A DNA stretch of 64,000 nucleotides from Euprymna scolopes (Eukaryota). The notes beneath the pieces were generated by a model. The model was not told where the DNA came from. It worked only from the letters and a program-made list of their open reading frames with translations, and ran no database searches. Location of the stretch: NCBI GenBank assembly GCA_053919585.1, contig CM132785.1. The stretch is one strand, 5' to 3'. Position numbers and translations under genes: made by a program. Positions within the stretch are counted from its first letter, which is position 1, and each line of letters starts with the position of its first letter. Positions 345 to 62,597 of this stretch are shown here, in pieces.

Positions 345-518
345 CTCCTTTTCCGCCTTCCAGTTTGAATAAGGCAACTCTCGACTTGTGGATATCAGCA
401 TCGAGTCCAGGAAGACCGAGACTGATGCTGTCTTTAATGGTCGCATCCAAAAGTTTCTTATCTTTTGCTTTCAATGCCGCTTTATGCCGTTTACGTAGAT
501 CGTCCACGGAAATTTCTC
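345..518 (-). CDS. exon, U1 class D repeat
   Basis: 174 nt, AG..GTTAG; GEISVDDLRKRHKAALKAKDKKLLDATIKDSISLGLPGLDADIHKSRVALFKLEGGKG. Confidence 0.9.
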
Positions 519-4219: not shown

Positions 4220-4284
<65 letters not shown>

Positions 4285-6303: not shown

Positions 6304-9300
6304 TTAATCTTGTATATATTCATATTACTATTTTTTATTTAATATTCATAAAATAGTCGATTTTATTCTTATGTTAAATAAATTTATCAATAAACTGATG
6401 CGAACCTGTGTCTCCATATTTCTTACGGAACAGACTGAACTTTGGAAGTTTCATTCCGAATTTAGGAAACGACCATGATCCTGATAATCAAAATGTAATA
6501 ATATTATACAATAATAGATGTTATTCTGCTAAAACGATTATTTTTTAAAACATTTTTGTGATTTTCTTAAAATAATAGACTGGTTAATTTGTTAATATAA
6601 TGATTATCAGAGATGAGTTTTCATTTCTTTACTATTAATAAATCAGAAAATAGATTGTATGATAATGATTGTAGTTTACTTAATGTGCATAGTCATTAAA
6701 TTTTAAGGTAGATAAAAACGACATAATGATGATTAGAGAGTGTTAACCAATTGAATAATTTAATACAAAAAACTACTTTAAATCAAAGAAACGGGCTACA
6801 TGAGAATATAAATCTAATGAAATGTAACGATGAAAACGCAGTATGATAAACTTATCTAACCTTCAACATCTGCTTCCATTTTTGGAAGTGCGGCACGGGC
6901 TTCTTTCAGATCAAGTTCAAGTTCTGGATATTGGGCTCTCTCAGCTTCCAAAATAAGCTTCTCAAGTGCAGGTCTATCATTGTTCTCCATAGCTAACTGC
7001 ATTTGGTAGCGTAGGTCTTCAGGGGACATCAATTCGATTGTAACATCTACATAAAATCATTAGGTTTTTGTAATTTTATATTAAGAATTATAGGAACTAC
7101 ATATTTGTATATTTAAAAAGCCAGCAATAGCAGAGTATTGTATAAATCAAAAGATTTTATATTATTGTTAAGTTAATATGAGACTACAATCAATATTTTA
7201 GTTGATGAGAACTGCTTTAAAGTGGATCCTTTTTTTTTTTCTTCTTTTGGTGATCTTATCATTGTCAAAATAAAATCTTTGCGGATAGACCTTTAGCAAA
7301 CATTAATAAGCATTCGATGATATAAAATAGAAATCATTGAATTCTTTAGTGATGATTTTAGCTATGAGACTAACATTTCTTATTAAAATGATGATAGTAA
7401 ACTTCAAAATAGCGAACCTTTATCTTTCTTCTTCTTTGAAAAGAGTCCAAAGCTGGGCATTTTGATGTCCAGGTCAGGGAGCGATATGGATCCTACTAAC
7501 CAAAATCAAATAAAGTTTAAGAAATACCAAAGAAGATATAACTGACAGATGGCAGACACTAACTTTGTAATAAGAGGGTAATTTCTTTTCAGGTAATTAA
7601 AAATTTTCAGGAATTACTTATCTTTTTATATTAAAATGAATTAAGGTTCTTAGATTATTGTAACTTATGTACCATTATATTAAGTGCACTTTATTAAGAA
7701 ATAATTAATTTATACAACTTAACAAATTAAATATAAATAAATAATCCGTCCATAAAAAAAATATAATGAGAATTTGGTAAAATGAGTAAAGAATTATAAT
7801 TAATAGAGAAAAGAATAGAATTTTTTTAACGTTTCATGTTAGTTAATCTTAAAAGATCATATCATATCATAATTTATAACGATAACAATTTGGAGCTTTA
7901 CCGTAGCTACTAGACGTGAATGATCGTTACAAACCTTTGCCACTTTGTTCCAAACCATCCAGATGTAATCTGGCTTCTTGGATAGCTGGCATGAGTTCTG
8001 GGTGTCCGTAACTGACACATTCGTCTATTACTTTCGCCAAAAACTCTGGATCGTTTTTCTTTATTGCACCCTTCAATTTCAGCTTTAGTTCGTCTACACT
8101 CAATTTTCCTGGCAAGCAAGTAATATTACATATTTATATTTTATATTTTTCAGCATTAGAGTGATTTAAAGTAGGTTATAGAAACGATAGGGATCATTTA
8201 CGGTATTGAAAAACGGCAGTCATTACATTAATGAAATAATTTAAAATACTCGACAGCATTTAGCGACTCAGATGAATGCAATTATTTGTATAATGTATGT
8301 TAATTGCTTCATGTTTTTGAAGTAATATAGATATATTTGATGATGCCTATTACGATCTATTGATGAATATAATGATTGCATGATAATGACAATTCTGCAA
8401 TAAAAATCAATGTAAGTTTGTTTACAATAAGAACAGTTATAGTTAAATAATTTGTTACAAATCGATACTCTTTTTATTCAATTAAAACGATAATTTGATA
8501 TTGATGATACAAAAAATGCAAGTATCGATTTAGATAAACGAAAAAGAGTGCAGCTAACCAGTATTCTAAGTGAGTTTGACAAGGAAATTCATTATAAATT
8601 TTGAAAATACTAACCTCCGCGACCAAAGCCCATACCGTCTAGTGTACCTCTGGCTAAATTGAGATCGAGCGCGAGTTCCGGGAATCCGGCTTCTTCGCAT
8701 TCAATGATGGCCTTTTCCAATTGAAGTTTGTCTTTGTTTTTGATTGCTGTCCTCAATTGACCACGAAGAAATTCCGGTGTTTTAAGATCTGATTAATGTA
8801 ATTAAGATCATGATTCTAAAATGTTACAATGAATTATAAGATTATTTTGATGTTTAATCATTTCGAGAATTGAATTTACATCGATGTATATTTTATATGG
8901 ATTTAAAAGTAATTCATATTATAATATTCAAAAACAGTCTTTATCTATAAATTGTTACATTTGTAAAAAGAAAATTATGATTGACGTTTTTTATAATCAT
9001 ATGTAAGACCTCTTAAAATGTTAATGAAATTATGTTATGAAGAGCTTTACAACTTAATCATAAAGTGAAATAATCATGAATCATAATTTATGTTGGGAAC
9101 CTTCGGTCGATATATAATGATTACTCCATAAGATCAATATTTCAATTATTATATTAAGTCAATAATAACGAAATAGTTTAAGCATATAGGATTTGTATTC
9201 AAAAGTGTATTCTAACCTCCTTTTCCGCCTTCCAATTTGAATAAGGCAACTCGAGACTTGTGGATATCAGCGTCGAGTCCGGGAAGACCCAGGCTAATGC

Positions 9301-11447
9301 TGTCTTTAATGGTGGTATCTAAAAGTTTCTTATCTTTAGCTTTCAATGCTGCTTCATGCCGCTCACGCAAATCGTCCAGGGAAATTTCCCCTAATAATTG
9401 AAAGTCAATATATTTTTAAAATCTCATATGAAATATCCTTTTAAATCATTTTAATAAATTTGACAACTAATTATTGTGAAAATAATGTATTTAATTAAAA
9501 TGATATTAGAGATATTGTTTTTTCATGGTCAAATTATGGTAAATAAAAGGCATAATTAAAGTAGTAAAATATGACAATAAGCGTAAGAGAGTACTATCAT
9601 TACAGCATAATATTTGCGTAATGCATTATATAATTATTTTTTAATTCTAACCTCCATATCCGCCGCCCAATTTGAAGAGTGCTTCACGGGCCTCACAAAG
9701 ATCGAACGCCAGTTCTGGATACTTGGCTTCCTCAGCAATGTCAATAAGTTGTTCTAATTTCGGTCGGTCGTTGTTCTTCACAGCTAAACGCAGTTGGTCA
9801 CGCAATATTTCTGGTGTCAAATCATCCAAAGATATATCTATTCAAAATCAGATTTTAATCGTAAATCATATTTCATAACGCCATGATGAAAATAATAATA
9901 AAGATCCTCATTTAAATTATTTATTGCTGGCTTATTATATGATCCTCATTTATTGTTTATTTCTGGCGGTTAATATGTATGTTTGTATATAGTTGAATTA
10001 CGATTGATATCTATTGTAGATGTGAACAGTGTTAATATTTAAATATAATTTATACAATTATCTTTATTTTAAATCTAAGGATAATTTATTATTCTGCGAA
10101 TAGTATTTTAAAATGTGAATCCTTGATAGATTTAAATATTTAAGCAGAATAATTATATGCATTTTTATATTAATATGTACATATATACAATGTATTTTAC
10201 AATTCATGCAAAAATATTAAATTAATGGATTCTGTACATATATCTTTATATATTTTATATATGATATTAAAACATTGTCATCTCGATATTAATAGAAAAA
10301 ATGTATCCGCAAATAAAAAAAATGATGCAAACCTGTGTCTCCATATTTCTTACGGAACAGACCGAATTTTGGAAGTTTCATTTCGAATTTTGGAAACGAC
10401 CATGATCCTGATAATCAAGATGCAATTAATGTTAGATAATAATAGATTAGTTATTTGTTTTCATGATAATATAAGAAATAAAGAAAGCTGTTTATTTGCA
10501 TGGGTAGAAAAGAGGTTTATTTATTATTAATGAATTTAAAAATAATTTCATATTTTCTATGAAGAAATTTTACCTCATATATGAGTGATTGTTATTTAAA
10601 TAACTTTACATTCGTGTGGTAAACTAAGATAATATAATGATAATGAAATGGCGTTGGTAAATTTACACATTTAATAAAAAGGAATGAATTTAAATTGATT
10701 TCAGTATGAGGATGCTATAAAATATGTAATTCATATATATTATAGGAATTGGTGCAAACGTGATATGATATACTTGTCTAACCTTCAACGTCTGCTTCCA
10801 TTCTTGGAAGTGCTTCACGAGCCTCTTTCAGATCTACTTCAAGTTCTGGATATGCAGCTTTCTCAGCTTCCAAGATAAGCTTCTCAAGTGCAGGTCTATC
10901 ATTGTTCTTCATAGCTAACCGCATTTGGGCGCGTAAGTCTTCGGGGGACATCAATTCGATTGAGACATCTATATAAAATTACCAGGTTTTTGTACTTTAA
11001 TATTAGAAACTGAATGATGCAAGTTAACTATTTAAAACTATGTGTTCTAGGTAATATTATTAATGTAGGTATATGACATAGGTTTATTATTTGTGAGTAA
11101 CTATTTTCATGTGTTATATTATAGTGTTTCTTAGTTTTAATTATTTTTATTAATAAGTAAGAGAGTAACTATTTTTAAATTATGTTTGTTTATGTCCATA
11201 TTAGCATATCGCTATTTTATAAACATTAAACCTGGATATGCATTGATAGATTGCTTATATAAAAACTATTAATCATGTTCGAATAATGAATATTGTTTGT
11301 AGATATATTTAACAAGTAACCTCAGTTTCCCAAATAAATAACTTATTTCTCCCTTACTCTCGTTCTCATGAATGTAATTTCGTTTCACTTCTATCCATTT
11401 TATCATATTATTTTTTGCTATAGTAAGACTTCTGAATTGATTATCGC

Positions 11448-37035: not shown

Positions 37036-37110
<75 letters not shown>

Positions 37111-51196: not shown

Positions 51197-51244
<48 letters not shown>

Positions 51245-51984: not shown

Positions 51985-52043
<59 letters not shown>

Positions 52044-52180
52044 GTTGAATGCATCGTAAAGTATTTTCATCAAGTTGTCATCTCTTAAATCTGTAGATGG
52101 TGCGTTGATGAAGTTAATCTTGAGAGGAATTCTGATAATTTTGTGTGCAGAAAGTGGAAATTTTATTAGATTTTTATCAC

Positions 52181-52230
<50 letters not shown>

Positions 52231-55200
52231 GCCCGTACATGTTTTCATGTTTCTTAGGGTGATTCAGGTAGCTGTATCTAACATTCGCATGGGTTACACC
52301 AAGATTTCGTAGAAGTATTGCATGTAACCTTAGTTTTCGCATACGTTTGTTCGTTTTACGGATTGATTTTTGATCACATAATACCAACATAAGGAAGGGA
52401 TTTGTTAAATCTAGTAATTATAAGCATAATTTGCACCAACGATAGTTTAAATGCACCTATTTCTTCAATAAACTAGATAGTAATAACTTTAATCATTATT
52501 ATCTCATGCATTGTAATATTATATGCGTATATAAAAAACAACAACAGCACATCTAACAGCTCTTTTGGAGAAATTTGAAGACAAATATGTTTTCGAATCC
52601 GTAGCACCATTACACGGGACCCCAAAAAGTTTTAGGGTTATTTATGTAATATTTTCATGTGCTACTAGAAGGTTTTAATACCTACGATGATGTGTTGGCT
52701 AAAACCCATGCAGATACAGACTCTATCTGATTTTGTGATATAGTAATAAACCTTCGTTTACATATGACGATTCTTTTATATTCAGAGTGTAGCAGAGAAG
52801 TTTACTCGAGTTCAAAGATTGATAAAAAGCAAATACGTGGAGATAAAACTTTGCATGTTACGTTGTTTGGATGTGTGCTCATTAAGAACAACATGCACCT
52901 TTCTTTTAACCAAGAAAGGTCGTATTAGAATAAATATATTAAATATCCGTCTAGTAGTATTTCAGAAATTAAATTTTCTCAGATCTTCATGGCAGATCCT
53001 GTCAAAGACCTTGGATATATGGAAAGCTACCGTTCTAATTTTATCTGCTATACTTAGTGTATAGTATATATGTTCAGAGATGACAGTATCCGCAGTAGAA
53101 CAGAATTGCCAAAATTCACACCATTAGTCAGAAGGAAATTTAGTATTTTCGATCTCTTGGGTTATCACTAAATTAATTAAATATTAATTCAAAGATCTTT
53201 TATAAGCTCGAGACGAGACTTATGGGTGGCATAAGTCTGCAGGTTGGTTCTCATCTTATGATACACTTTTATATTTAATATCCTATCCGTGTGTAGAACA
53301 TCATGCGTTTCTTGGGAATTTTCTTTTGTAAGAACGGTAAGTCCGATGTAAATACACTATGTTCCTATTGAATGTAGTTTTCTCTTCATCGTTATTAGCC
53401 AGTATCAGATGGGTACATATTTTATTTGTAAGGTTCTAAATTTAGATAAATATTTTCCTCTTTAAATAATCAGCTACAAGGACAGGAAATATGGTAGAAA
53501 AATTTAGCGATCGTCACTTTAGTGGTACTATTTTCATAGCCATCTATACCAAACATACTTATACATACTAGTTGTTTTTATTATATATTTGATTTTATTA
53601 AACTTTGAAATCTAACAAACTGCTCTGCGCCACTCCATATACGTTATATCTAGATTAAGCCTTAAAATAATTCAAGCATTGCAGTAAATTTTATAAAGCG
53701 TGTAAGCAGATGAAATGCACAGAAACTTGCGCTTTGCGCTGATTCTGTTCTGGTAGACTGACCTCCTCGGCCTCCATCCCAAAGGTCCAGTGTGTGACGG
53801 GCATTCTGGATATCAGGAATTAATTCCATGTGACCAGAAGCTACACACTCGTCAATCAATCGCTCAAGATTTTCTCGATCGTTTTGTCTTTTTGCCAGTT
53901 CAATTTCGTCGCGCATTTTGTCGGGGTGTCTATTGCCTGGCAACCGAAAAATATTCATCAATGTACGAAAATTAAATGAAATCTATGTAAATAAAATATA
54001 GCTTTCCCAATCAAAATTATTACTTAGACTATGAATAATCGCAACGCTATACTTTTTAGTTATAAAATGTTACAGGTGAATTATAGAAACAACTACTGCA
54101 TACTGGAAGTTATACTTTGAATGGTATTCAATATATGTTGAATGAATTTATATTCATATGTAATAGCATGAGAACATAATCAATTAATCTTTTTACAACT
54201 TTTCATTTTTAGTTTCAAATAAAGTAACAAACTTAGGCGACATTTCCACAATCTAATATTAAATATGTTTTTCATAATCACGATTTTCTGTACTAATAAT
54301 TTATGTTCTTTATAAAATATATTTAATATCTTTATCCGATTATTTTTAGTTCTTCGTATTAAAGTAGTATACATTTTGTTTTCTGAAAATTGGGGATTCT
54401 TCTATAATTACATTGCATTTCTTTCAAAAACAAAGATTTAATATATAAACATATTTTTCGATCATGAACTTTAAATTGATGTAAAATAAAACAAAAATAT
54501 TTCGATAAAATTATTATACTATACTATATATGAATACTTGCATTTATCATCCACTTATGAAAATATTAAAGAGCGTAGAAAATAAAATTATTTGTACGAA
54601 AATGTAATAAAAACTATGAAAATAAAATTTACTATTATATTAAATACTTTTATTAAAATATGTTGTTTTTAATAAAAAGTTCAGGTTATCGTCCTTTATT
54701 AGAATTATGATTTCATGCTTATCTCCCTTGCAATTTTCCTGCAATTTTAAGACATTATGTTAGATATTATCGAATATTATCATTTTTTTAATCAGCGTAT
54801 TGCGTAAAACATGGACTTGTTATCACTAAATTATTAATGCTATATTACTTTAAATCTGCTTTAAAGTAAAGAAAAACAATAGATATCGTATTTTACTTTG
54901 AATAGAGAATTTAATTTTGGAATATAGATGTAATTTTCATGACGAGTACAGTATAGTAAAAATTAACATATATAATAAAACTAAGTATATTTTATAATCG
55001 TATATAAAAGTCTGAATTTATCGTTCATTTACGAAAATATGAAAGAATATTACAAGAAACGGCATTATAGTAATGTGAATTTAAACTTCCAAAACCATTA
55101 TCGCAATTCTTACTTTCTTTTCTTTCCTTTTTTATGAAGTAATGTATATTTAAATGAAACCGGAATAACGAATTTTTCCACAGCCTAAAATTTATATTCG

Positions 55201-56044
55201 ATTAATAGAAGATATTAATGAATTATCATTCTTTCAAAATATTGCTGATATCTAATCTTAATTATGAATTGTTTCCACGTAAGGAAAGAACAAGTAATAA
55301 TTGTAAATGCTTATCCGTGTATATATTTATTTGAAATAGTAATTATACGCATGATTTATATACTAACCTCCACGACCGAAACCCATGCTCTCCAGAATGT
55401 CTCTGGCTTCAAGAAGATCGCGAGACAATTCTGGATAACAGGCTTCCTCACATTCAATGATGGCCTTCTCCAATTCAGGCCGGTTTTTACTCTCGCTTGC
55501 TTTTTTCAGACGATCAAGGATCTCTTTTGGTGATTTTAAGCCTGAAGGACAAGAATATTATCGTATGATTTGAATAAAATTTATCCACGTATTAGACTAA
55601 TTAGAATTTTGATATTTTGTCTTGATTCAATGATGAACAATAGTACTGTTGATTTTATAACATTATTATTAGTTGAGATAAGACTAAATTAAATTAAAAT
55701 TGATGTGAGTTTACTTTATAATTACAGTATTGAACACCTTCTGTGTTTTATCATGCATTTTCTTGCTTTGAGATCTGTTTTATTAATATATAATCATGTT
55801 TGTTTATGAGAAGATTTCATTTTTATTTGAAAAAATTATATAATGTAACTGTCAATATTTTCCCATTTAAAGCTTTGTTTATAATGTTATTATTACGAGT
55901 GCTCATTTCATTCCATCAATATTGCAATAGTAGTAGCAATAATTTTCCATTGTTAGAATGTCATTATGCATTAAGTAACTAGTTCCTCAATCATTTAGTG
56001 TTGATTAAATGCAACAGTATATCTCTATTTATAGAAGTTAGGTA

Positions 56045-56093
<49 letters not shown>

Positions 56094-57131
56094 GTATATT
56101 TGTATATACAGGTTTACTTTAAAACTATTTCACCGATCATTATTACATTTGGAACATAGGTATAAGGAATCGGAGATAATGTGGACTCTATTTTGCTTAA
56201 TTTAGTTTTATGCAAATTCCTGCATGCCAACGATATTAAAACTTAGGTAGGTTGAATGAGTTCCTCCGAAGGAAGAACACAAGGAAACACAAGCATTCCC
56301 CATTCGCATGTATATCCCGGCTAGGTTTTTGGAGCGGGGGATTAGTGTCCTCCTACATACAGCGGATGGTATTCCCAAATAGTCAGCCACCTGATACTGA
56401 CCAAGCTTTACGTTACTTAACTTCGGTGATCTATTGAGAACCGGTGGGTTAACATGATTATGCCGTACATTACAATGCAAATTCCTAAATTTCAATTTAA
56501 AGGAGTATTTTAAAGAATTTAAAAGATTTAAAGAATTTATATGGGTACAACATCCCATTTTAAAATCCAAATATTACAATTTTGCATTAAATTTGAACTA
56601 TAGTGATTCGACTATAATTAAGCAAGCTTCCCTGATATTTTAAGATCCATTAAGTTTAAGCCTTAAGTTTTAAATATTTTCCAGAATAAAAATAATATAA
56701 TAGATTTAGATCGAAAGGGAAAATAATTTTACCTGTCCTAGGACGGGTGTTCTTCTATAATATCGATGGGTCTTCATTTAATTAAACCATAACTTACGCC
56801 ATGAAGCAACCGGTTTTTTATTGAGTAATTTATGTAAATACTAATTATGGCGATCATTTACTTCAAAGTTTTACATGTACACCTAGTAAAAATGATATTT
56901 AGAAATAAGTTAATTTTCTATGTAGAAATAAACAGTTGGCCTATTTTTAATTGCATAAGGTATGAATCACATAAAAAGTCCATATTTACTTTCAGTGAAG
57001 TTAAGTATTGTCTTTTCAGAATTTTCTCCTGCCTACGCAGCACTTAAACTACCTGAAATGTTAGGAATGTGGACGAATAAAAAAATATTTCACTACCCAG
57101 GTCCCAAAAGCACACTTTGGGAAGTAAAATA

Positions 57132-57186
<55 letters not shown>

Positions 57187-58410
57187 TATGCATACGAATT
57201 CAGTTAATTTCAGACTATTACAGCTGATACTTATAGTTCTGAAGAAGCAGGAAATATGGATGTATATATAGAAAATGTAGTTATTTGAAACATTATATGA
57301 TGGTAGTTGCACAAGTAATCACTGTCAGGATAAAACTACTTTTAATGGGTAAAGGATGGGTGGCTCAATCTAAAAGGAAATCTAATCTTCATTTCCAGCT
57401 TATGCTGTTTATATAACAGTTTTTAACTTCTCAACCTGCCGGTTGCGACAAATAGCATATAGCAAACGAAATGTTAATTTAAAGAGTTATGCCACTCTGT
57501 GTTATTACAACAAAAATGATCTTTCTAAAATATTCCATTATAAAATGCCATGTTATTTATTCTGTTTATAAGGTACTAGATAAATACCTGTCCCAGTACG
57601 GGAAAAACTGATTCCTCAAGAGGAACATTTTTAAAATAAGATAAGTGGCTAACTTTAATCGAAGGCAATCTAAAGGTTCTCTTTTTAATAGTTACAACAC
57701 CTAAGTGAAGAGGAGGACGCCAATTATTTCTCAGGATTACTCCATTTCCCTGTGAGTCACCTCTTATAAAGATGAATATTAGCAAGAGTGTATGATTGAT
57801 ATGACTTGACCGAAATTTGAATCCCAGTCTTCTAGCAAATCAGCGGACACTCTTACCAGTATGCCAAATGGGCCAGTATAACAGTTTTCTACCACTTTTA
57901 TGTCCTTTTCGATTATTACAATCAGCATATGATGATGGTGAACTTTATGTTAATACTTCTTAATCCTATTTTTATCAAATTTTATTTTTAGCTTACGGGG
58001 TCTTAAGAAGAATTTTAAATTTAGGAAATCTAGCTTGATTAGTTTAATGCATGTGGATAAAATTCGATGCTAATCTAATTTTTGTTTCAATCTTTAAATA
58101 GGGAAGTATGCTTATATTATGCTCATGAACTTTTAAAAATACTTTAAACAAATTGAAGTTGGGTGAATATTAAATACTTTAAGTCTAATACATATTGGTA
58201 AAATTTCACACAATCGAAGGCATTTGATTTTTCACGAAGGTCTTCCACCCTCTTTTTACTCCTTTGCATAAGCTTAATTAAGCTAAATATTACCTACACT
58301 TTCATTCTTTATGCAGAGGGGTGGTGTTAACAAATTCAAAACGATCGGTTAATTAATCTTGGATTTAAACCTGTATATACAAATAAGTAAACACATATAC
58401 ACAGAACATG

Positions 58411-58485
<75 letters not shown>

Positions 58486-61400
58486 TCAACTTCATATAAA
58501 CGAGGATAATATGCACTTTTTATTCGCCACTTAGTTGTGAAATCTTATTTTCCGAATTGACGAATGCTAACCTTCTTTGCCGCCTTTCAGGACATAGTGA
58601 GTCTCTCTGGCCTTTTGGATATCGTCTTCCATGCCAGGGAAACCAGCTGACACACACATCTTAATTACTTTGTCCAGTTTTCGCTGATCTTTTTCTTCTA
58701 TGGCTTCCAATAGTTGTTGACGTAACATCTCAGGGGTTCTGCTTCCTGAGAATCACAACCGATTTATTCGATATAAGATATAATACGGAAAATGGCAAAC
58801 ATAACATTCATTGTTTAAGAAAAATAATATGGATCAAGGTTTGTATTGTGTGATTGATACAGTTTAGATTTAATAATTTACTTGGATAGTGAGCGCATTG
58901 AATTTTACATGTTGAAGTGATTCATTATGATTCGTTTACTTTTACAAAAATTATTAAAAGCAAAGAACGTTGCTGGCGATTGCAGCAACGAATTAATGTC
59001 AAATTATATGGATATGAGAACGATTGAATGGACATATGAAATCATATACTTGATCATTTAAATCACTTTAATATTATAAAGAGTATACACGAAGGTATTA
59101 CACTTATTTACAGCCGTTTCAATACAATGTTTATTTTAAGTTATCTAAACAAAAACATAAATGTCTTTTTAATATCGTATTTCGTTAGAGCAGAATTTTT
59201 CTTTGACAAGATTGACAGAAAGAAATTATTTAATAAAAAGGGCATGTGTGTATGTCTGTGTTCCAAAGAGAAAGAGAGAGAACAGGCGATTTTCGCAAAT
59301 ATTAATGTATGCTGACCTCCATAACCTCCACCCAGTTTGTTAAGCGTTTCTCTTGCATCTAAAAGGTCGAAACCAAGTTCGGGATACTCGGCTTTTTCAC
59401 ACTCGAGGATTATTCTTTCCATAGTTGGACGATCCTTTCCTTGCACAGCAATTCTGAGCTGTTGCCTTAAAACATCAGGCGATTTTGTAGCCATCATACG
59501 ATCTATGGTCAAAATAAATGTCATGGAAACCGAATATTAAATTTGGTATACACGGAAATGAAAAGTTCTTATCGTAGATATATGATTAGATTAGGCTCAA
59601 CGGATTAGGTTTTTCTCATGCTTTTTGGACCATCATAGATAATCTAAAGAAAAATAACATGCTTTTGATTTTAGTTCATCAACATAGTGTTATAAGTGCT
59701 TATATTATGTGTTATTCTTTAATTAATGTGTTAAATGGGGAATGCTTCGGTCGATTTATACACAAGTAAGCCCTGGAATTAAAATAGAAGATTAGAAAAA
59801 AACAAATACTTCGGAAATCGAGAACATTCCGTATTTTAAAGTCATTCATCTGAAAAATAATATTCATAAATGAATAATAAAAAATATTCGAATAAAAATA
59901 TAGTCCATCCGTGAATATATATTATTAGTGTTTTTATAGAAGAATTAAAATAAAGAAAATAGTGTTTTAAACTGTGTAAAACGCAAAGCGTTTCATAGAT
60001 TTGGTAACGATTGTATGTAAATTTAGAAGAAAGATGTTCATCTTTCAGTTATCTTTAGTCAATACTATCTATTTTCATGAAGGGTGCAGGCAAAACTCTC
60101 TTATCATACCGGTATAGCCACCTAATAAGTGAAAACCCTAAACAGTAACAATCAGGATAGAGTACAGTGTTAAACAGGTAGTTGGGTAAAATAAAAATCG
60201 TCAACTGGATAATTTCGAACGAGATAGAGAATGAAAAATACGGAGATGAATGGGGGAACAGAATTTGCAGACCTTCACTAAACTGCTCGACAATCAAGCC
60301 TGTCGTACTTCCGGATTGGTAAACGTCAGACATAACTTCAGTATAAACACTCTGTCCATAAGAACGAGGAACCATTCCAGACGATGAATAACCATAATAG
60401 ACAACACCTTTCAAATCAAAACAAAATCAATGAGAAACAACGCTAAATAAGATGGTAATTGTATTAAAAATAGTATTTTCGGCAATAGATAATTCTACAT
60501 TTAAACAAAATCAAAACAGCTTAACAATTTTACAAGCAAAAATAAGCCGGATAAAAACATTGCTTACAATGATAATATTTCAAACAGACAGGATTAATAA
60601 TACAATTAAAATATATAAATGACTTAAGTATGGTAAATTATATACGTGGACATATCATTAAATAAAGCATCTACAGAAAGCAATTAATTAAACTATTTTC
60701 AAATATCCAATCTGGAATTTTAATAGTATACCATTTTCATTGCATAATAAATATCACACGGTAAATATATTCATATTAAAATGATCATAATAACTAAGTT
60801 TTTAGCTATGAATTATACAATGTCATATATAGAAATACATACTCATATACATATATATAATTATATATATATATGTGTATATATATATTTATATATATAT
60901 ATATATATATATACATTATACTGTAGATGTATAAGTCCTCTTGAGTATGTACATATGTATGCTTGTATAATTACGTGTTTATTTTTTGTCTTATGGAGAA
61001 ATATGTGCGAAAATTTATAAAAAATATAGTATATGTTTCATAGATAAGTTTATTATTAGCAGAGACTTATGTGTTACTCCTTATGCAATCTTCTGATAGA
61101 GATAACGTATTTGCTGGCATTTATTTGAAAAGCAAACTCTGCCAAAGAATTTATAAATTTATCTCGGTCAGAAAACTGCATGTGTGAGAGGAAACACACT
61201 TAACAGTAAAACGCAATAAATAAAATCTATTATAAGCTTATTTAAATTTATGATAAGTTTCATGTTGCCCTATTTTCTAAATTAAAATATTAAAACACTG
61301 GGACTTTCGTATGAAATATACCTATTTTATGTAAAAATGCGTTTACACTGGTGCTTAATTCAGATTTTATAAGGTATGTTAAGAGATAAAACTTAACAAT

Positions 61401-61599
61401 ATATATTAACGTTTCTCTCAATAGTTAAGATGGTTTTATCAAAACTATACCAAAATAGTGGTAAAAATATATCTGTCGGCTTTTCGGTTTGTTACTCTTG
61501 ATAAATCCCTCGTAAAATTAGGCGAGAAGTTTAGATGTATTTTTAAGTTTTAGATCGCCTCTTTTCCATTTTATCTTATACCATCATATTTATTTAATC

Positions 61600-61672
<73 letters not shown>

Positions 61673-62597
61673 AACAAGTAGTTAATAAAACATGTTAAAA
61701 CACTTTGAAAAAGAGTTAAAAACATTTAATTTTTAAAAGAAAACACTAAATAAATGATAGTCCTTAATCCGCGGAGTTTCGAAGGACTATCCATTTATTT
61801 AGTGTTTCGTTTTAAAAATTAAATATGTTTTAACTCTTTTTCACAAGTGTTTTTTAACATGTTTTTTTAACTACTTGTTCTTATTATAAGCTCTATCTCC
61901 TATTTGGTTTTATCGAGCATTTACATCTGGTTGAGATATCTTTATAAATATGAATTCTTTAATATTTATATTTTACTTTAGTTTTGCCATCTTTGATCAT
62001 TTTGGTNNNNNNNNNNNNNNNNNNNNNNNNNNNNNNNNNNNNNNNNNNNNNNNNNNNNNNNNNNNNNNNNNNNNNNNNNNNNNNNNNNNNNNNNNNNNNN
62101 NNNNNNNNNNNNNNNNNNNNNNNNNNNNNNNNNNNNNNNAAAAATAGTATAGATCAAGATGAATTGCTAGTACACTCAATTCATTCAAAGAAATATTCCT
62201 CACCAGTTATACATCGTATTTTAACCCGCTGTAACATTGTAAAACAAAGTGCATGGTTTTACATTGTTGTAAAGCAATTACATACTTACTATACGTAAAA
62301 CTTAATACAATTTTCATACATAAATGCTGCAATACACAAACCTTACTAAAAGCTAGAAATATAATGAATAGCATTGGAAGCCGAAATAAATCGAGAGAAA
62401 TGGTTTAAAAACAAACTAACCTCTGTCAGGTCTGTTTAATAGGGAGTCCATATTGTCTCGAATAAATTCGATATCTGACCACAGTTCAGAATGACCAAGT
62501 GACAAACATTCATCAACGCTTTGTTCTAGGGCATGACGATCGTTTTGTCTTACATTGGCCATCAGTTTTTCACGCTGTTTTTCGACATTCTTACAAC
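345..62597 (-). CDS. Partial giant multi-exon gene: tandem helical-repeat protein (75 symmetric phase-1 exons, ~3,830 aa in window; both ends outside window)
   Basis: 75 GC-richer islands in AT-rich DNA. Each is bounded by AG/GT on the minus strand, has a length divisible by 3 and the same phase, and encodes homologous repeats in a regular order. Every exon I translated is open. No start exon or unique terminal exon seen. Confidence 0.88.
793..978 (-). CDS. exon, U1 class A repeat
   Basis: 186 nt, AG..GTCAG; DISLDDLTPEILRDQLRLAVKNKDRPKLEQLIDIAEEAKYPELAFDVCDAREALFKLSGGYG. Confidence 0.9.
1457..1531 (-). CDS. exon, U1 linker L1
   Basis: 75 nt, AG..GTTCG; GSWSFPQFEMKLPKFSLFRKKHGDT. Confidence 0.87.
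1868..2053 (-). CDS. exon, U1 class E repeat
   Basis: 186 nt, AG..GTTAG; DVSIELMPPEDLRYQMRLAMKNNDRPALEKLILEAEEAQYPELEVDLKEAREALPKMEADVE. Confidence 0.9.
2705..2779 (-). CDS. exon, U1 linker L2
   Basis: 75 nt, AG..GTTCG; GSLSFPDINIKMPSFGLFSKKKKDK. Confidence 0.87.
3203..3376 (-). CDS. exon, U1 class B repeat
   Basis: 174 nt, AG..GTTTG; GELSVDELKLKLKGAIKENDPDLLAKVIDECVSYGHPELMPNIQEARLRLDTLEESGK. Confidence 0.9.
3764..3937 (-). CDS. exon, U1 class C repeat
   Basis: 174 nt, AG..GTTAG; ELKTPEFYRGKLRAAIKNKDRAQLEKAILECEKAGFPELSLDLNLARDTLEGMGFGRG. Confidence 0.9.
4095..4438 (-). mobile_element. 5S rRNA-derived SINE (SINE3-like), degenerate, with internal (TA)n expansion
   Basis: Reverse complement of ~4325-4438 reads TATGGCATTATCACGTTGACACACCAGTCTCCGTCAAATCAACAAAGTTAAGCAACG..ATGGGTGACC..GGAAT, colinear with metazoan 5S rRNA. 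The non-5S body is shared with the copy at ~56245-56468. The 3' end is approximate. Confidence 0.75.
4223..4281. repeat. (TA)n microsatellite
   Basis: Direct read. Similar intronic tracts at ~6266, 11452, 14955, 23670, 28422, 37038 (TA then GA), 51199, 51957, 52186, 56048, 58415, 61603 and 63011. Confidence 0.95.
5339..5512 (-). CDS. exon, U2 class D repeat
   Basis: 174 nt, AG..GTTAG; homologous to 345-518. Confidence 0.9.
5761..5946 (-). CDS. exon, U2 class A repeat
   Basis: 186 nt, AG..GTTAG; homologous to 793-978. Confidence 0.9.
6406..6480 (-). CDS. exon, U2 linker L1
   Basis: 75 nt, AG..GTTCG; homologous to 1457-1531. Confidence 0.87.
6861..7046 (-). CDS. exon, U2 class E repeat
   Basis: 186 nt, AG..GTTAG. 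Confidence 0.9.
7418..7492 (-). CDS. exon, U2 linker L2
   Basis: 75 nt, AG..GTTCG. Confidence 0.87.
7935..8108 (-). CDS. exon, U2 class B repeat
   Basis: 174 nt, AG..GTTTG; inside ORF 7927-8115. Confidence 0.9.
8615..8788 (-). CDS. exon, U2 class C repeat
   Basis: 174 nt, AG..GTTAG. Confidence 0.9.
9217..9390 (-). CDS. exon, U3 class D repeat
   Basis: 174 nt, AG..GTTAG. Confidence 0.9.
9652..9837 (-). CDS. exon, U3 class A repeat
   Basis: 186 nt, AG..GTTAG; overlaps ORF 9647-9829. Confidence 0.9.
10333..10407 (-). CDS. exon, U3 linker L1
   Basis: 75 nt, AG..GTTTG. Confidence 0.87.
10783..10968 (-). CDS. exon, U3 class E repeat
   Basis: 186 nt, AG..GTTAG. Confidence 0.9.
11703..11777 (-). 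CDS. exon, U3 linker L2
   Basis: 75 nt, AG..GTTCG. Confidence 0.87.
12168..12341 (-). CDS. exon, U3 class B repeat
   Basis: 174 nt, AG..GTTTG; inside ORF 12019-12348. Confidence 0.9.
12809..12982 (-). CDS. exon, U3 class C repeat
   Basis: 174 nt, AG..GTTAG. Confidence 0.9.
13491..13664 (-). CDS. exon, U4 class D repeat
   Basis: 174 nt, AG..GTTAG. Confidence 0.9.
13923..14108 (-). CDS. exon, U4 class A repeat
   Basis: 186 nt, AG..GTTAG. Confidence 0.9.
14312..14442. other. assembly gap (N run)
   Basis: Run of N; exon order is unbroken across it. Confidence 0.99.
14543..14617 (-). CDS. exon, U4 linker L1
   Basis: 75 nt, AG..GTTCG. Confidence 0.87.
15061..15246 (-). CDS. exon, U4 class E repeat
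   Basis: 186 nt, AG..GTTAG. Confidence 0.9.
15797..15871 (-). CDS. exon, U4 linker L2
   Basis: 75 nt, AG..GTTCG. Confidence 0.87.
16204..16377 (-). CDS. exon, U4 class B repeat
   Basis: 174 nt, AG..GTTTG; inside ORF 16172-16486. Confidence 0.9.
16898..17071 (-). CDS. exon, U4 class C repeat
   Basis: 174 nt, AG..GTTAG. Confidence 0.9.
17583..17756 (-). CDS. exon, U5 class D repeat
   Basis: 174 nt, AG..GTTAG; inside ORF 17578-17787. Confidence 0.9.
18064..18249 (-). CDS. exon, U5 class A repeat
   Basis: 186 nt, AG..GTTAG. Confidence 0.9.
18727..18801 (-). CDS. exon, U5 linker L1
   Basis: 75 nt, AG..GTTCG. Confidence 0.87.
19238..19423 (-). CDS. exon, U5 class E repeat
   Basis: 186 nt, AG..GTTAG. 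Confidence 0.9.
19977..20051 (-). CDS. exon, U5 linker L2
   Basis: 75 nt, AG..GTTCG. Confidence 0.87.
20380..20553 (-). CDS. exon, U5 class B repeat
   Basis: 174 nt, AG..GTTTG; inside ORF 20369-20680. Confidence 0.9.
20939..21112 (-). CDS. exon, U5 class C repeat
   Basis: 174 nt, AG..GTTAG. Confidence 0.9.
21648..21821 (-). CDS. exon, U6 class D repeat
   Basis: 174 nt, AG..GTTAG. Confidence 0.9.
22235..22420 (-). CDS. exon, U6 class A repeat
   Basis: 186 nt, AG..GTTAG. Confidence 0.9.
22832..22906 (-). CDS. exon, U6 linker L1
   Basis: 75 nt, AG..GTTCG; GSWSFPQLEMKSPKFSLFRKKYGDT. Confidence 0.87.
23384..23569 (-). CDS. exon, U6 class E repeat (diverged)
   Basis: 186 nt, AG..GTTAA; DVTDEPRSPDVLRYGISLAIKNKDTPLLEKFILEAERANYPELEFELEQARKVLPKLGDEVE. 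Confidence 0.87.
24413..24478 (-). CDS. exon, U6 linker L2 (9-nt in-frame deletion)
   Basis: 66 nt, AG..GTTTG; GSMSFPIKITSFELFSKKKEDK. Confidence 0.82.
24820..24993 (-). CDS. exon, U6 class B repeat
   Basis: 174 nt, AG..GTTTG; inside ORF 24782-25000. Confidence 0.9.
25493..25666 (-). CDS. exon, U6 class C repeat
   Basis: 174 nt, AG..GTTAG. Confidence 0.9.
25928..26200 (+). mobile_element. SINE-like interspersed repeat with (CCAA)n tail
   Basis: GC-rich intronic island (ATTGCCATTGCTCCCAGGTCCACTCTGACCCGGAGTG..GTACCTGTTAGGGTCCC) ending GCCATAAAACAACCAACCAACCAACCA. It resembles an abundant cephalopod SINE from recollection, not from a search. Confidence 0.65.
26308..26481 (-). CDS. exon, U7 class D repeat
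   Basis: 174 nt, AG..GTTAG; inside ORF 26303-26536. Confidence 0.9.
26797..26982 (-). CDS. exon, U7 class A repeat
   Basis: 186 nt, AG..GTTAG. Confidence 0.9.
27464..27538 (-). CDS. exon, U7 linker L1
   Basis: 75 nt, AG..GTTTG. Confidence 0.87.
27970..28143 (-). CDS. exon, U7 extra class B repeat occupying the E slot
   Basis: 174 nt, AG..GTTGG; GELSVDDLRLKLKGAIKRNDPEFLEKVITECISSGYPELNPDIQEAKIHLASLEESDK. Confidence 0.88.
29147..29221 (-). CDS. exon, U7 linker L2
   Basis: 75 nt, AG..GTTCG; GSISFPEFNIKVPSFGFFSKKKEDE. Confidence 0.87.
29667..29840 (-). CDS. exon, U7 class B repeat
   Basis: 174 nt, AG..GTTTG; overlaps ORF 29653-29835. Confidence 0.9.
30409..30582 (-). CDS. exon, U7 class C repeat
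   Basis: 174 nt, AG..GTTAG. Confidence 0.9.
30931..31104 (-). CDS. exon, U8 class D repeat
   Basis: 174 nt, AG..GTTAG; inside ORF 30926-31132. Confidence 0.9.
32429..32614 (-). CDS. exon, U8 class A repeat
   Basis: 186 nt, AG..GTTAG; inside ORF 32424-32663. Confidence 0.9.
33048..33122 (-). CDS. exon, U8 linker L1
   Basis: 75 nt, AG..GTTTG. Confidence 0.87.
33802..33987 (-). CDS. exon, U8 class E repeat
   Basis: 186 nt, AG..GTTAG. Confidence 0.9.
34558..34632 (-). CDS. exon, U8 linker L2
   Basis: 75 nt, AG..GTTCG; GSFSFPGFNVRMPSTGIFSRKKHHK. Confidence 0.85.
35524..35697 (-). CDS. exon, U8 class B repeat
   Basis: 174 nt, AG..GTTCG; inside ORF 35480-35863. Confidence 0.9.
36353..36526 (-). 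CDS. exon, U8 class C repeat
   Basis: 174 nt, AG..GTTAG. Confidence 0.9.
36667..36960. mobile_element. possible MITE remnant
   Basis: Short inverted ends CAGTTTACGA ... TCGTAAACTG around a GC-richer core. Confidence 0.3.
37295..37468 (-). CDS. exon, U9 class D repeat
   Basis: 174 nt, AG..GTTAG; inside ORF 37290-37475. Confidence 0.9.
38314..38499 (-). CDS. exon, U9 class A/E-type repeat
   Basis: 186 nt, AG..GTTAG; DVSVQVMTPETLSEQLRVTAQNNDRPNLERLIQVAEEVQYPELGLDLREARESLHKMGGGYG. Confidence 0.9.
38658..38770. repeat. imperfect palindrome / foldback element (~50-bp arms)
   Basis: ATTTAGTCAGGGCTGGGCATAAGTAAAGAATACCAAAAGGTGAAA pairs imperfectly with TTTCACTTTATGGTATTCATTGCTTATTTCCAGTCCCGCGGACTAAAT. 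Confidence 0.75.
39495..39569 (-). CDS. exon, U9 single linker L
   Basis: 75 nt, AG..GTTCG; GFKPFSGFQMKLPSMRLFSKGETQP. Confidence 0.85.
39699..40135. mobile_element. MITE-like element
   Basis: Perfect 15-bp inverted ends AAAGGAATCCGTAAC ... GTTACGGATTCCTTT, with some further imperfect pairing inside. Confidence 0.5.
40504..40677 (-). CDS. exon, U9 class B repeat
   Basis: 174 nt, AG..GTTTG; inside ORF 40493-40714. Confidence 0.9.
40831..40880. repeat. short direct duplication
   Basis: TTCTAATCAATTGAATTAC occurs twice, ~30 bp apart. Confidence 0.8.
41785..42110. repeat. degenerate tandem duplication (~185-bp period), intronic
   Basis: ATCTTAAG..AAGAC..AAAGTCAGAAA.TAATAGA..TAGAAAAAATGTG.TTT..GCAAAAAGA occurs twice. 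Confidence 0.6.
43069..43242 (-). CDS. exon, U9 class C repeat
   Basis: 174 nt, AG..GTTAG; GMKAPGTLRGELKAAIESKSQPELEKAIIECEEVCYPELSLDLRQARDTLDGMGFGRG. Confidence 0.9.
43645..43818 (-). CDS. exon, U10 class D repeat
   Basis: 174 nt, AG..GTTAG; GSITPEKVRVQLKTAVKEKDKKALDLAVKESIVTGMPGIEVDIQEARDALCQLEGRPG. Confidence 0.9.
44998..45183 (-). CDS. exon, U10 class A repeat
   Basis: 186 nt, AG..GTTAG; overlaps ORF 44993-45178. Confidence 0.9.
45618..45879 (+). mobile_element. possible non-autonomous Helitron remnant
   Basis: TCTA-rich start, a GTGTGTCTGT tract, a GGTCGATTTTTATGAAATT motif and a degenerate hairpin-like end before TTAGT. This layout is typical of short invertebrate Helitrons, but the copy is degenerate. 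Confidence 0.4.
47701..47838 (-). CDS. exon, U10 long unique linker
   Basis: 138 nt, AG..GTTAG, in the linker slot; GFASPGASHPLFTTSGGKITYGDQHFPPGMMSVDMGQVGYPFSEGR. Confidence 0.75.
49173..49346 (-). CDS. exon, U10 class B repeat
   Basis: 174 nt, AG..GTGGG; GSQTPESLRLSLDSAKRENDAEALEIAIDECVSSGHPELFPDIQQARNILVFMETGRE. Confidence 0.87.
49807..49980 (-). CDS. exon, U10 class C repeat
   Basis: 174 nt, AG..GTTAG; GSKSPKDIRENLRRAIKQKSRPHLENVILECEETGYPELSRDLLEARDTLEKLGFGRG. Confidence 0.9.
50321..50494 (-). CDS. exon, U11 D-slot repeat
   Basis: 174 nt, AG..GTCAG; GKTNPEHLRNKLNEAIKEKNPSHLAKVIKKCLASGFPELDPDIRRARASLDHLRGNER. Confidence 0.88.
50975..51160 (-). CDS. exon, U11 class A repeat
   Basis: 186 nt, AG..GTCAG; ELFGGGKSPNVLREELILATEQKDQPALENLLVEAEHLEYPELAYEVREARLTHKKLGGVYG. 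Confidence 0.88.
51685..51837 (-). CDS. exon, U11 long unique linker (alternative in-frame acceptor at 51801)
   Basis: 153 nt (or 117 nt), AG..GTTAG; VMSPGFISTEYPGSPGSPQRRTVKMVTTHRVHTGFPETMSGFYHRLMGGTK. Confidence 0.7.
53763..53936 (-). CDS. exon, U11 class B repeat
   Basis: 174 nt, AG..GTCAG; inside ORF 53662-53961. Confidence 0.9.
55368..55541 (-). CDS. exon, U11 class C repeat
   Basis: 174 nt, AG..GTTAG; GLKSPKEILDRLKKASESKNRPELEKAIIECEEACYPELSRDLLEARDILESMGFGRG. Confidence 0.9.
56245..56468 (-). mobile_element. 5S rRNA-derived SINE (SINE3-like), second copy
   Basis: Reverse complement reads GTACGGCATAATCATGTTAACCCACCGGTTCTCAATAGATCACCGAAGTTAAGTAACGT..AGTA..GGTGGCTGAC..TGGGAATACC..GCTGTA (5S-like head), then GTAGGAGGACACT..CAAAAACCTA..TGCGA.TGGGGA..GCTTGT..CCTTCGGA, shared with the 4095-4438 copy. 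Confidence 0.78.
57640..57880 (-). mobile_element. tRNA-derived SINE, degenerate
   Basis: The minus strand begins with a tRNA-like head (TGGCATACTGGTAAGAGTGTCCGC..AGACTGGGATTCAAATTTCGGTCAAGTCATA, A/B-box-like), followed by a body resembling mollusc SINEs. Confidence 0.65.
58572..58745 (-). CDS. exon, U12 class D repeat
   Basis: 174 nt, AG..GTTAG; GSRTPEMLRQQLLEAIEEKDQRKLDKVIKMCVSAGFPGMEDDIQKARETHYVLKGGKE. Confidence 0.9.
59317..59502 (-). CDS. exon, U12 class A repeat
   Basis: 186 nt, AG..GTCAG; inside ORF 59141-59524. Confidence 0.9.
60273..60407 (-). CDS. exon, U12 long unique linker
   Basis: 135 nt, AG..GTCTG, in the linker slot; GVVYYGYSSSGMVPRSYGQSVYTEVMSDVYQSGSTTGLIVEQFSE. Confidence 0.7.
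61671..61881. repeat. long imperfect palindrome (~95-bp arms), foldback/MITE-like
   Basis: AGAACAAGTAGTTAA..AACACTAAATAAATGATAGTCCTT pairs with AAGGACTATCCATTTATTTAGTGTT..TTAACTACTTGTTCT; centre near 61772. Confidence 0.85.
62007..62139. other. assembly gap (N run)
   Basis: Run of N. Confidence 0.99.
62421..62597 (-). CDS. exon, U12 class B repeat (most diverged)
   Basis: 177 nt, AG..GTTAG; GCKNVEKQREKLMANVRQNDRHALEQSVDECLSLGHSELWSDIEFIRDNMDSLLNRPDR. Confidence 0.85.

What the first reader, a model, noticed from the sequence alone, without database searches (positions are those of the whole stretch)
345..62597. 75-exon array of interchangeable one-exon-one-domain cassettes forming a giant super-repeat protein of an unrecognised family
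Seen: 55 repeat exons and 20 linker exons, all phase 1/phase 1 with lengths divisible by 3, in 12 ordered units. The ORF track shows only fragments and misses most C, E and linker exons. Established: symmetric exons can be skipped in any combination without a frameshift, as in titin PEVK exons, and exon arrays generate diversity in Dscam. Inference: the locus encodes either a >3,800-aa beads-on-a-string scaffold with a 348-aa super-repeat (a nebulin/titin-like ruler) or a combinatorial or length-variable isoform generator. I do not recognise it as a named gene.
Basis: partly seen in the sequence, partly recalled or inferred. Interest (0 to 1): 0.9.

Follow-up and report, generated by a model that had tools for sequence, protein, structure and literature searches.

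The report
Part of a giant bead-chain gene
The window holds 75 real, consecutively spliced exons, a 3,830-residue slice of one very large and strongly expressed mollusc gene made of small three-helix beads and short basic linkers; the protein family has so far only been predicted in octopus genomes and never studied.

Summary
On the minus strand, from 345 to 62597, there are 55 module exons (174, 177 or 186 nt) and 20 linker exons. All have AG/GT ends and all are phase 1-1. Spliced together they give an open frame of 11,493 nt (3,830 aa) with a 348-aa, seven-exon super-repeat.

RNA contigs from four mollusc RNA-seq runs join neighbouring exons exactly at the predicted sites. Every type of junction is seen at least once, and no skip junction was seen. 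The scaffold reading is therefore supported. A Dscam-like reading is refuted, and combinatorial skipping has no support, although contigs cannot exclude it.

Gap 14312-14442 lies in an intron and is bridged in frame by RNA. Gap 62007-62139 was not tested.

"Unrecognised family" is only partly right. The module has no Pfam family, no solved structure and no paper. It is, however, the tail module of octopod KY-like (kyphoscoliosis-peptidase-like) proteins, including a 6,596-aa Octopus sinensis RefSeq model with 94 modules and the same 174-nt phase-1 exons.

Two features were absent from every relative fetched: the basic-aromatic linkers and the seven-exon super-repeat.

The scan has already found this same gene on neighbouring DNA (notes s1-241389, s1-259177 and others).

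The parts
345..62597 (-). Whole array in this window: 75 exons, 11,493 nt of coding sequence, 3,830 aa. The gene runs off both ends of the window.
   Evidence: the full exon list is in the report text
35524..62597 (-). 5' zone: four-module units D-C-B-A, each followed by one linker. There are three divergent linkers and then one 75-nt linker at 39495-39569. Introns reach 3 kb.
345..34632 (-). 3' zone: seven-exon super-repeats in transcript order L2-E-L1-D-C-B-A. Each is 1044 nt = 348 aa and occupies 4.0-5.9 kb of genome.
12168..12341 (-). Module exon of type A (174 nt), acidic, with the ECVSYGHPEL motif.
   Evidence: RNA junctions 12341|12809 and 11777|12168
11703..11777 (-). Linker exon L2 (75 nt), basic-aromatic, SFPDINIKMPSFGLFSKKKKDK.
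   Evidence: RNA junctions 10968|11703 and 11777|12168
10783..10968 (-). Module exon of type E (186 nt), the most acidic type.
   Evidence: RNA junction 10968|11703
10333..10407 (-). Linker exon L1 (75 nt), SWSFPKFEMKLPKFGLFRKKYGDT.
   Evidence: RNA junction 9837|10333
9652..9837 (-). Module exon of type D (186 nt).
   Evidence: AlphaFold model of this module shows three helices
9217..9390 (-). Module exon of type C (174 nt), near-neutral, with the GLPGLD motif.
   Evidence: loose ends at 8790 and 12984 read the end of a C exon
8615..8788 (-). Module exon of type B (174 nt), ending in GFGRGG.
60273..60407 (-). Divergent linker exon (135 nt), phase 1-1, Gly/Ser/Tyr-rich.
   Evidence: no RNA check
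51685..51837 (-). Divergent linker exon (153 nt).
   Evidence: RNA junctions 51837|53763 and 51160|51685 in up to four runs
47701..47838 (-). Divergent linker exon (138 nt).
   Evidence: RNA junction 47838|49173 in four runs
49173..51160 (-). Four module exons: 50975-51160, 50321-50494, 49807-49980 and 49173-49346. All three internal junctions are read in RNA contigs with no mismatch.
   Evidence: one 1,065-nt contig of run X3 spans exons 51685-51837, 50975-51160 and 50321-50494
27970..28143 (-). Irregular unit: an A-type module sits in the slot that otherwise holds an E module.
24413..24478 (-). Shortened L2 linker (66 nt, three codons missing, still in phase).
14312..14442 (.). Assembly gap inside the intron between linker 14543-14617 and module 13923-14108. 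The mRNA bridges it in frame.
62007..62139 (.). Assembly gap in the presumed intron between module 62421-62597 and linker 60273-60407. Continuity was not tested.

Best explanation
This is an internal slice of one very large mollusc gene, most likely cephalopod, transcribed from the minus strand. Each 174-186-nt exon encodes one acidic three-helix bundle of about 57 residues. Every second to fifth exon encodes a short linker rich in basic and aromatic residues. All exons are phase 1-1 and are spliced one after another in genomic order into a continuous chain. That much is shown. The modules are the same kind that forms the tail of octopod KY-like proteins (transglutaminase-like core plus Ig-like_KY head), and the exon plan is shared with them. 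That is also shown. The array grew by old tandem duplication, first of four-module units and then of a seven-exon 348-aa unit. Each copy has since been kept under purifying selection. This is shown by Ka/Ks and by the diverged introns. Inferred function: a long, regularly punctuated structural filament or scaffold. Acidic helical beads set the spacing, and the periodic basic-aromatic linkers are the likely contact sites for a partner such as actin, membrane lipid or a small Ca-binding protein. It would then work as a cytoskeletal spacer or ruler, not as a source of isoform diversity.
For: Gene model: 75/75 AG-GT ends, all phase 1-1, 3,830-aa open frame. Splicing: canonical junctions read at exactly the predicted positions, namely 47838|49173, 49346|49807, 49980|50321, 50494|50975, 51160|51685 and 51837|53763, and 9837|10333, 10968|11703, 11777|12168 and 12341|12809. 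Exon depth is 10-100 times intron depth in run X1. Selection: Ka/Ks 0.13-0.32 at Ks 0.32-0.89 among same-type copies. Only 1.0-2.4 kb of each 4-5.9-kb unit still aligns between units, so the introns have drifted. Fold: AlphaFold2 gives three helices for one module, pLDDT 78. Four octopus modules give pLDDT 89 and pTM 0.81, which points to a defined chain, not a floppy one. Family: a profile of the 55 modules finds 192 proteins among 1.84 billion. The long animal hits are octopod KY-like proteins with 10-94 modules. The O. sinensis locus L001 has the same 174-nt phase-1 one-module exons. The octopus tail has period-2/4 module order with D-C-B-A runs. Charge: modules have pI 4.5-5.8 (type C 7.5). 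Linkers have net charge +3.7, pI 9.9 and 19% aromatic residues.
Against: The RNA evidence comes from assembled contigs, which drop rare isoforms, so constitutive inclusion is not proven. In the homogeneous 3' zone, contigs from other copies of the array can lie here at 95% identity, so those junctions are not unit-specific. The KY-like head lies outside the window and was not seen here. No tissue, localisation or partner is known, so the function is inference from composition and periodicity alone. The linker's resemblance to AHNAK or MARCKS-type basic-aromatic motifs comes from my memory and found no support in a PDB sequence search.
Confidence: 0.72

Rival explanations
1. Length-variable or combinatorial isoform generator. 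Because every exon is symmetric, cells skip variable sets of cassettes or whole super-repeats, as in titin PEVK, to tune length or to generate diversity.
For: All 75 exons are phase 1-1, so any skip keeps the frame. Logan contigs drop minor forms, and joins between near-identical units cannot be told from neighbour joins.
Against: Only neighbour-to-neighbour canonical junctions were seen in four runs. Depth across the six unique 5'-zone exons is even within about twofold in run X1. The odd joints have non-canonical ends and sides under 30 nt, as expected from repeat chimeras.
Confidence: 0.13
2. Dscam-like mutually exclusive cassette array. One exon of each type is chosen per transcript.
For: Many similar exons of a few types in ordered clusters.
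Against: Adjacent exons, including same-cycle neighbours of every type pair, are spliced to each other. One 1,065-nt contig carries at least three array exons in a row.
Confidence: 0.01
3. The real transcript is much shorter. The array is partly an assembly artefact (wrong copy number around the two gaps), or it holds several separately transcribed genes or decayed copies.
For: Two N gaps. Oligo-dT libraries give high depth far from any expected 3' end, which could mean internal ends or internal priming on the A-rich linker exons.
Against: Units differ by 15-25% at the DNA level and their introns have diverged, so they are not collapsed or inflated copies. There is no stop in 3,830 codons, and Ka/Ks is well under 1 in every exon type. 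RNA bridges gap 1. O. sinensis RefSeq already models 94 modules in one protein.
Confidence: 0.1

Closest known systems
Octopus sinensis LOC115214248 (XP_036360723.1, 6,596 aa) and its octopod relatives (O. vulgaris CAI9725887.1, O. bimaculoides LOC106876157, the Argonauta hians model). All are predicted, uncharacterised KY-like proteins.
   Same: The same ~57-aa three-helix module (per-module E 1e-12 to 1e-24 against the window profile; 55-62% identity). The same one-module-per-exon, 174-nt, phase 1-1 plan. The same alternation of module types, with D-C-B-A runs.
   Different: No linker exon is found in those proteins or in the 27.7-kb octopus locus. They have no seven-exon 348-aa super-repeat and no E-type slot. 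The head and the C-terminal tail of the window's gene were not seen.
Vertebrate KY (kyphoscoliosis peptidase) and leech hillarin
   Same: The octopod relatives carry the transglutaminase-like core and three Ig-like_KY domains.
   Different: From my own knowledge, vertebrate KY is about 660 aa and has no helical-module tail. The head domain is not in this window.
Titin PEVK region and nebulin super-repeats
   Same: Long runs of symmetric exons, each encoding one short module. Modules are grouped in a higher-order super-repeat, seven units per repeat here as in nebulin. The product is giant.
   Different: No sequence or fold relation. There are no Pfam nebulin or titin hits. The modules are folded three-helix bundles, not 35-residue actin-binding helices or disordered PEVK. 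Differential splicing is documented for PEVK but was not seen here.
AHNAK / periaxin-type basic-aromatic repeats
   Same: The linker motif (S-F-P-x-F/I-x-x-K-x-P-S/K-F-x-L-F-S/R-K-K) recalls the K-M-P-K-F type motifs of AHNAK. This comes from my memory only.
   Different: PDB sequence searches with the linker and with its profile gave no AHNAK match. From my own knowledge, AHNAK repeats lie in one giant exon. Here the linkers are 25 residues long and sit between helical modules.
Uncharacterised helical repeats in tails of protist myosins, kinesins and other proteins (Rhodelphis, dinoflagellates, diatoms, haptophytes)
   Same: Weak but repeated profile matches with the same L-x-x-A-I-x-x-x-D-x-x-x-L-x-x-A-I-x-x-A-E-x-x-G-L pattern. 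Foldseek finds such proteins at E 2e-4 and weaker.
   Different: Per-module E-values reach only 1e-5 to 1e-9. Common descent is not shown, and the hits could be convergent helical repeats.

Membership tests
Octopod KY-like giant module proteins (LOC115214248 type) | Tandem ~57-aa three-helix modules with the consensus P-x-x-L-R-x-x-L-x-x-A ... L-E-x-x-I-x-E-C-E-x-x-G-x-P-E-L ... A-R-x-x-L | tested here: met
   The window profile hits 16 modules in P0152, 94 in P0165 and 27 in P0158. The reciprocal best identities are 55-62%.
Octopod KY-like giant module proteins (LOC115214248 type) | One module per exon, about 174 nt, phase 1-1 | tested here: met
   Window. O. sinensis locus L001.
Octopod KY-like giant module proteins (LOC115214248 type) | N-terminal transglutaminase-like core plus three Ig-like_KY domains | not testable with these tools
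   The 5' end of the gene lies beyond the window. Only an unchecked scan note (s1-259177) says that it is there.
Octopod KY-like giant module proteins (LOC115214248 type) | Modules directly abutting, without linker peptides | tested here: not met
   There are 20 linker exons in the window. There are none in P0165, in L001 or in any other protein scanned with the linker profile. I treat this as a variant feature.
Dscam-type mutually exclusive exon clusters | Alternative exons of a cluster are never spliced to each other | tested here: not met
   Neighbour junctions are read in RNA contigs.
Nebulin / titin | Nebulin 35-residue modules, or titin Ig/Fn3/PEVK modules, recognisable by Pfam | tested here: not met
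   No Pfam family matched any module or linker.
AHNAK | Sequence similarity of the linker to AHNAK repeat peptides; repeats held in a single giant exon | tested here: not met
   The PDB searches gave only Strep-tag and chance hits. The gene here has many exons. The search was weak because the query is only 24-27 residues.
Spectrin-type three-helix repeats | A ~106-residue three-helix repeat with a Pfam or Foldseek match | tested here: not met
   No Pfam hit. No PDB match at E <= 0.001 for one module or for four modules.

The most novel reading that the evidence does not exclude
The window is about one eighth or less of a single transcript that runs through several hundred such exons. Scan notes on neighbouring windows count 98, 104, 50+ and about 166 more. 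That would give a titin-sized protein with a KY-like head. In this lineage its tail has gained periodic basic-aromatic docking linkers that set a 348-residue ruler, which would make it a new class of giant cytoskeletal spacer in cephalopod muscle or nerve.
Probability: 0.3. Interest if true: 0.8.

Novelty: new variant of a known kind. Interest (0 to 1): 0.6.

Why it matters
Giant modular proteins such as titin, nebulin, obscurin and AHNAK set dimensions and mechanics in cells, and all the well-studied ones come from vertebrates, flies or worms. Here is a real, spliced, highly expressed gene for a different kind of giant chain, built from an undescribed three-helix module. The family has no Pfam entry, no solved structure and no paper. 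Genome annotation handles it poorly: the Argonauta model makes 1,720 aa from 205 kb of gene, and most database hits are single-exon fragments. If the whole array is one transcript, it would be among the largest animal proteins. The regular spacing of charged linkers gives a directly testable ruler hypothesis. The link to KY, a muscle-disease protein of unclear function, could also show what the KY head does.

Tried and rejected
1. Pfam scans of modules, linkers and intron ORFs gave nothing above noise.
2. Foldseek of the one-module and four-module models against PDB gave no match at E <= 0.001, only designed helical repeats and bS20.
3. The ESM Atlas feature search returned only unnamed clusters from molluscs, diatoms and haptophytes, with scores under 0.75.
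4. The AHNAK idea for the linker was not supported. The PDB phmmer and profile searches returned Strep-tag II (WSHPQFEK against WSFPKFEM) and a V-ATPase subunit by chance.
5. A word-index search for other 3,600-11,500-aa relatives of the O. sinensis protein found none.
6. The exact look-up of the O. vulgaris protein's locus was not on record. The Argonauta locus was too long to fetch.
7. Literature searches for kyphoscoliosis peptidase with cephalopod or octopus found only proteome lists.
8. Non-canonical joints (8805>9200, 12213>12323, 13611>13921, 12982>9218, 12359>8400) were judged to be repeat chimeras or mis-laid paralogous copies. They have short sides and non-GT/AG ends.
9. My first automatic donor choice for two D exons (45007 and 59326) was corrected to 44998 and 59317 by homology with the RNA-confirmed 186-nt D exon 50975-51160.
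10. No tRNA was found.

Full report
**What is there.** The window is AT-rich eukaryotic DNA (GC 0.25-0.32) with two N runs, 14312-14442 and 62007-62139. Clustering all stop-to-stop ORF pieces by BLASTP gave one family of 55 pieces and another of 16. Both lie only on the minus strand. The plus-strand families are their antisense shadows. The translations show a module of about 58 residues and a 25-residue linker. Reading one unit of DNA showed pyrimidine-rich AG acceptors and G|GTTAGA-type donors that split a glycine codon after its first base, which is phase 1 on both sides.

**Exon table.** Automatic picking of in-phase sites gave most of the exons. To these I added a linker profile hit, a scan of the long gaps and two direct reads. 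The result is 75 exons. In transcript order, as window coordinates on the minus strand, they are: 62421-62597, 60273-60407, 59317-59502, 58572-58745, 55368-55541, 53763-53936, 51685-51837, 50975-51160, 50321-50494, 49807-49980, 49173-49346, 47701-47838, 44998-45183, 43645-43818, 43069-43242, 40504-40677, 39495-39569, 38314-38499, 37295-37468, 36353-36526, 35524-35697, 34558-34632, 33802-33987, 33048-33122, 32429-32614, 30931-31104, 30409-30582, 29667-29840, 29147-29221, 27970-28143, 27464-27538, 26797-26982, 26308-26481, 25493-25666, 24820-24993, 24413-24478, 23384-23569, 22832-22906, 22235-22420, 21648-21821, 20939-21112, 20380-20553, 19977-20051, 19238-19423, 18727-18801, 18064-18249, 17583-17756, 16898-17071, 16204-16377, 15797-15871, 15061-15246, 14543-14617, 13923-14108, 13491-13664, 12809-12982, 12168-12341, 11703-11777, 10783-10968, 10333-10407, 9652-9837, 9217-9390, 8615-8788, 7935-8108, 7418-7492, 6861-7046, 6406-6480, 5761-5946, 5339-5512, 3764-3937, 3203-3376, 2705-2779, 1868-2053, 1457-1531, 793-978, 345-518.

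All 75 have AG/GT ends, and all lengths are multiples of three. The joined frame is 11,493 nt = 3,830 aa without a stop, about 429 kDa with pI 5.3. Exons make up 18% of the span. Introns run from 248 to 3,030 nt with a median of 480. Exon GC is 0.44 against 0.25 for introns.

**Order of the exons.** I call the five module types A to E, the two 75-nt linkers L1 and L2, and the three long divergent linkers X. The transcript then reads A X / D C B A X / D C B A X / D C B A L2 / D C B A L2 E L1, and then further seven-exon cycles to the end of the window, which stops after D C. The window therefore crosses a boundary, at about 35 kb, between a zone of four-module units and a zone of 348-aa seven-exon super-repeats. 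Two irregularities keep the frame. An A-type module at 27970-28143 sits in an E slot, and the linker at 24413-24478 is 66 nt long.

**Is it spliced as predicted?** RNA-seq runs that hold the sequence are labelled as mollusc or invertebrate. Their contigs were laid on 8400-14300 and on 47801-53800. In the unique 5' zone, all six predicted junctions were read with CT..AC ends on the plus strand, which is GT..AG on the minus strand, and mostly with no mismatch. They are 47838|49173 (four runs), 49346|49807, 49980|50321, 50494|50975, 51160|51685 and 51837|53763. A 1,065-nt contig of run X3 runs through 51685-51837, 50975-51160 and 50321-50494 and beyond. In the 3' zone the junctions 9837|10333, 10968|11703, 11777|12168 and 12341|12809 were read. 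Loose ends at 8790, 12343 and 12984 spell the ends of the preceding C or B exon.

So every kind of junction (X-D, D-C, C-B, B-A, A-X, A-L2, L2-E, E-L1, L1-D) is seen at least once. E-L1 is seen only weakly, at depth 2.5 with one stray letter. Exon depth in run X1 is in the thousands to tens of thousands against tens to hundreds in introns. No canonical junction between non-neighbours appeared. The other joints have non-canonical ends and short sides. They fit chimeras between near-identical copies, or contigs from paralogous units laid here.

There are three limits. These are contigs, not reads. In the homogeneous zone a junction cannot be assigned to one unit. Both read-laying runs are now used.

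**The gaps.** A contig of run X1 runs out of module exon 13923-14108 into the letters CCCCATGTTTTTGGCGGAACA. In the whole window these occur only at 14549, inside linker exon 14543-14617. The six letters before them are the same in the exon and in the intron start. The 14312-14442 gap is therefore intronic and the flanks are joined in frame. The 62007-62139 gap lies in the presumed 2.0-kb intron between 62421 and 60407. The two other A-to-X introns (1.3 and 1.9 kb) hold no extra exon, but this one was not tested.

**History and selection.** Genomic units are 4.0-5.9 kb long. Between units only 1.0-2.4 kb still aligns, at 73-84% identity, that is, the exons and their edges. Same-type exons differ at Ks 0.32-0.89 with Ka/Ks 0.13-0.32. 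The duplications are therefore old, and each copy has been kept as coding sequence.

**What the module is.** There is no Pfam match. AlphaFold2 on an alignment of 77 modules gives three helices (8-21, 24-37 and 40-57) with mean pLDDT 78. Four consecutive octopus modules give pLDDT 89 and pTM 0.81, which suggests that neighbouring bundles pack in a defined way. Foldseek finds nothing in PDB at E <= 0.001 and only bS20-like three-helix hits in Swiss-Prot models. In AFDB clusters the first hit is an uncharacterised 1,234-aa protein at 50% identity. The following hits, from E 2e-4 down, are uncharacterised proteins and proteins named as kinesin-like, SH3 and similar. Modules are acidic, with pI 4.5-5.8 (type C 7.5). 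Linkers carry about +3.7 net charge and 19% aromatic residues.

**Relatives.** A profile of the 55 modules against 1.84 billion representatives found 192 proteins at E <= 0.001. Most are single-exon fragments of 50-130 aa from assemblies. The named ones are the following:
- "Kyphoscoliosis peptidase-like" from O. bimaculoides.
- A 2,069-aa "transglutaminase-like domain-containing protein" from O. vulgaris, with Transglut_core, three Ig-like_KY domains, 16 modules and a tail.
- An Argonauta hians model with 10 modules, whose gene spans 204.6 kb.
- O. bimaculoides LOC106876157, with 27 modules.
- O. sinensis LOC115214248, 6,596 aa, with the KY-like head, 94 abutting modules and a unique C-terminal tail.

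A 27.7-kb piece of the O. sinensis gene shows ten modules, each on its own exon, mostly 174 nt and phase 1-1. The octopus tail has period-2/4 module order and contains D-C-B-A runs. No linker is found in these proteins, in that locus or in any other protein scanned with the linker profile. Weak repeated matches in the tails of protist myosins and other proteins share the helix pattern, but descent is unproven. I found no paper on the family.

**Reading.** Four things are shown:
- The gene is real and highly expressed.
- The exons are spliced consecutively.
- Each exon encodes one module.
- The gene is related to the octopod KY-like giants.

Three things are inferred:
- The product is a long structural chain.
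- Acidic three-helix beads set a regular spacing. In the transcript, one module (E) separates L2 from L1, and four modules (D C B A) separate L1 from the next L2.
- The basic-aromatic linkers act as periodic contact sites.

The isoform-generator reading has no support, and its Dscam-like form is refuted.

**Earlier scan notes.** These were read after I had found the KY link. They say that neighbouring windows carry 98, 104, 50+ and about 166 further exons of the same kind, and that one follow-up judged the gene to be about 640 kb with about 600 exons and a KY-like head. I could not check the size or the head from this window. The module fold and the octopus link agree with what I tested myself.

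Noticed in passing
window 56354-56470 (-): A full-length Rfam 5S_rRNA match (56.4 bits against a gathering score of 38). It lies inside the 3-kb intron between module exons 58572-58745 and 55368-55541, on the gene's strand. It is probably a dispersed 5S pseudogene or a 5S-derived SINE.
   Followed up: no
P0069, P0124, P0109, P0120, P0019 (proteins): Protist proteins carry many weakly matching helical repeats of 45-55 aa with the same L..AI...D...L..AI..AE..GL pattern. They include the Rhodelphis and MyTH4 myosin tails and the Polykrikos protein. The module may belong to an old, unnamed repeat class that is common in dinoflagellates and other protists.
   Followed up: partly
The look-up of encoding contigs place for P0161 (Argonauta hians): The annotated 1,720-aa model spans 204.6 kb of genome, so the annotation very likely leaves out most module exons. 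Most database members of the family are single-exon fragments.
   Followed up: partly
window 10333-10407 and other L1 linkers: The L1 linker start GSWSFPKFEM matches Strep-tag II (GSWSHPQFEK) in the PDB searches. This is a chance resemblance that could mislead automated annotation.
   Followed up: yes
window 4223-4282, 14955-15015, 23671-23771, 28422-28484, 51957-52042, 58411-58483, 61603-61670, 63011-63077: There are eight long (AT)n microsatellites of 30-50 copies, all in introns or flanks of the array. One more run at about 11450-11510 stops contigs.
   Followed up: no
window 47801-53800, introns: Intron sequence is present in the RNA runs at roughly 5-15% of exon depth. This is pre-mRNA or DNA carry-over. 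It does not affect the junction evidence.
   Followed up: no
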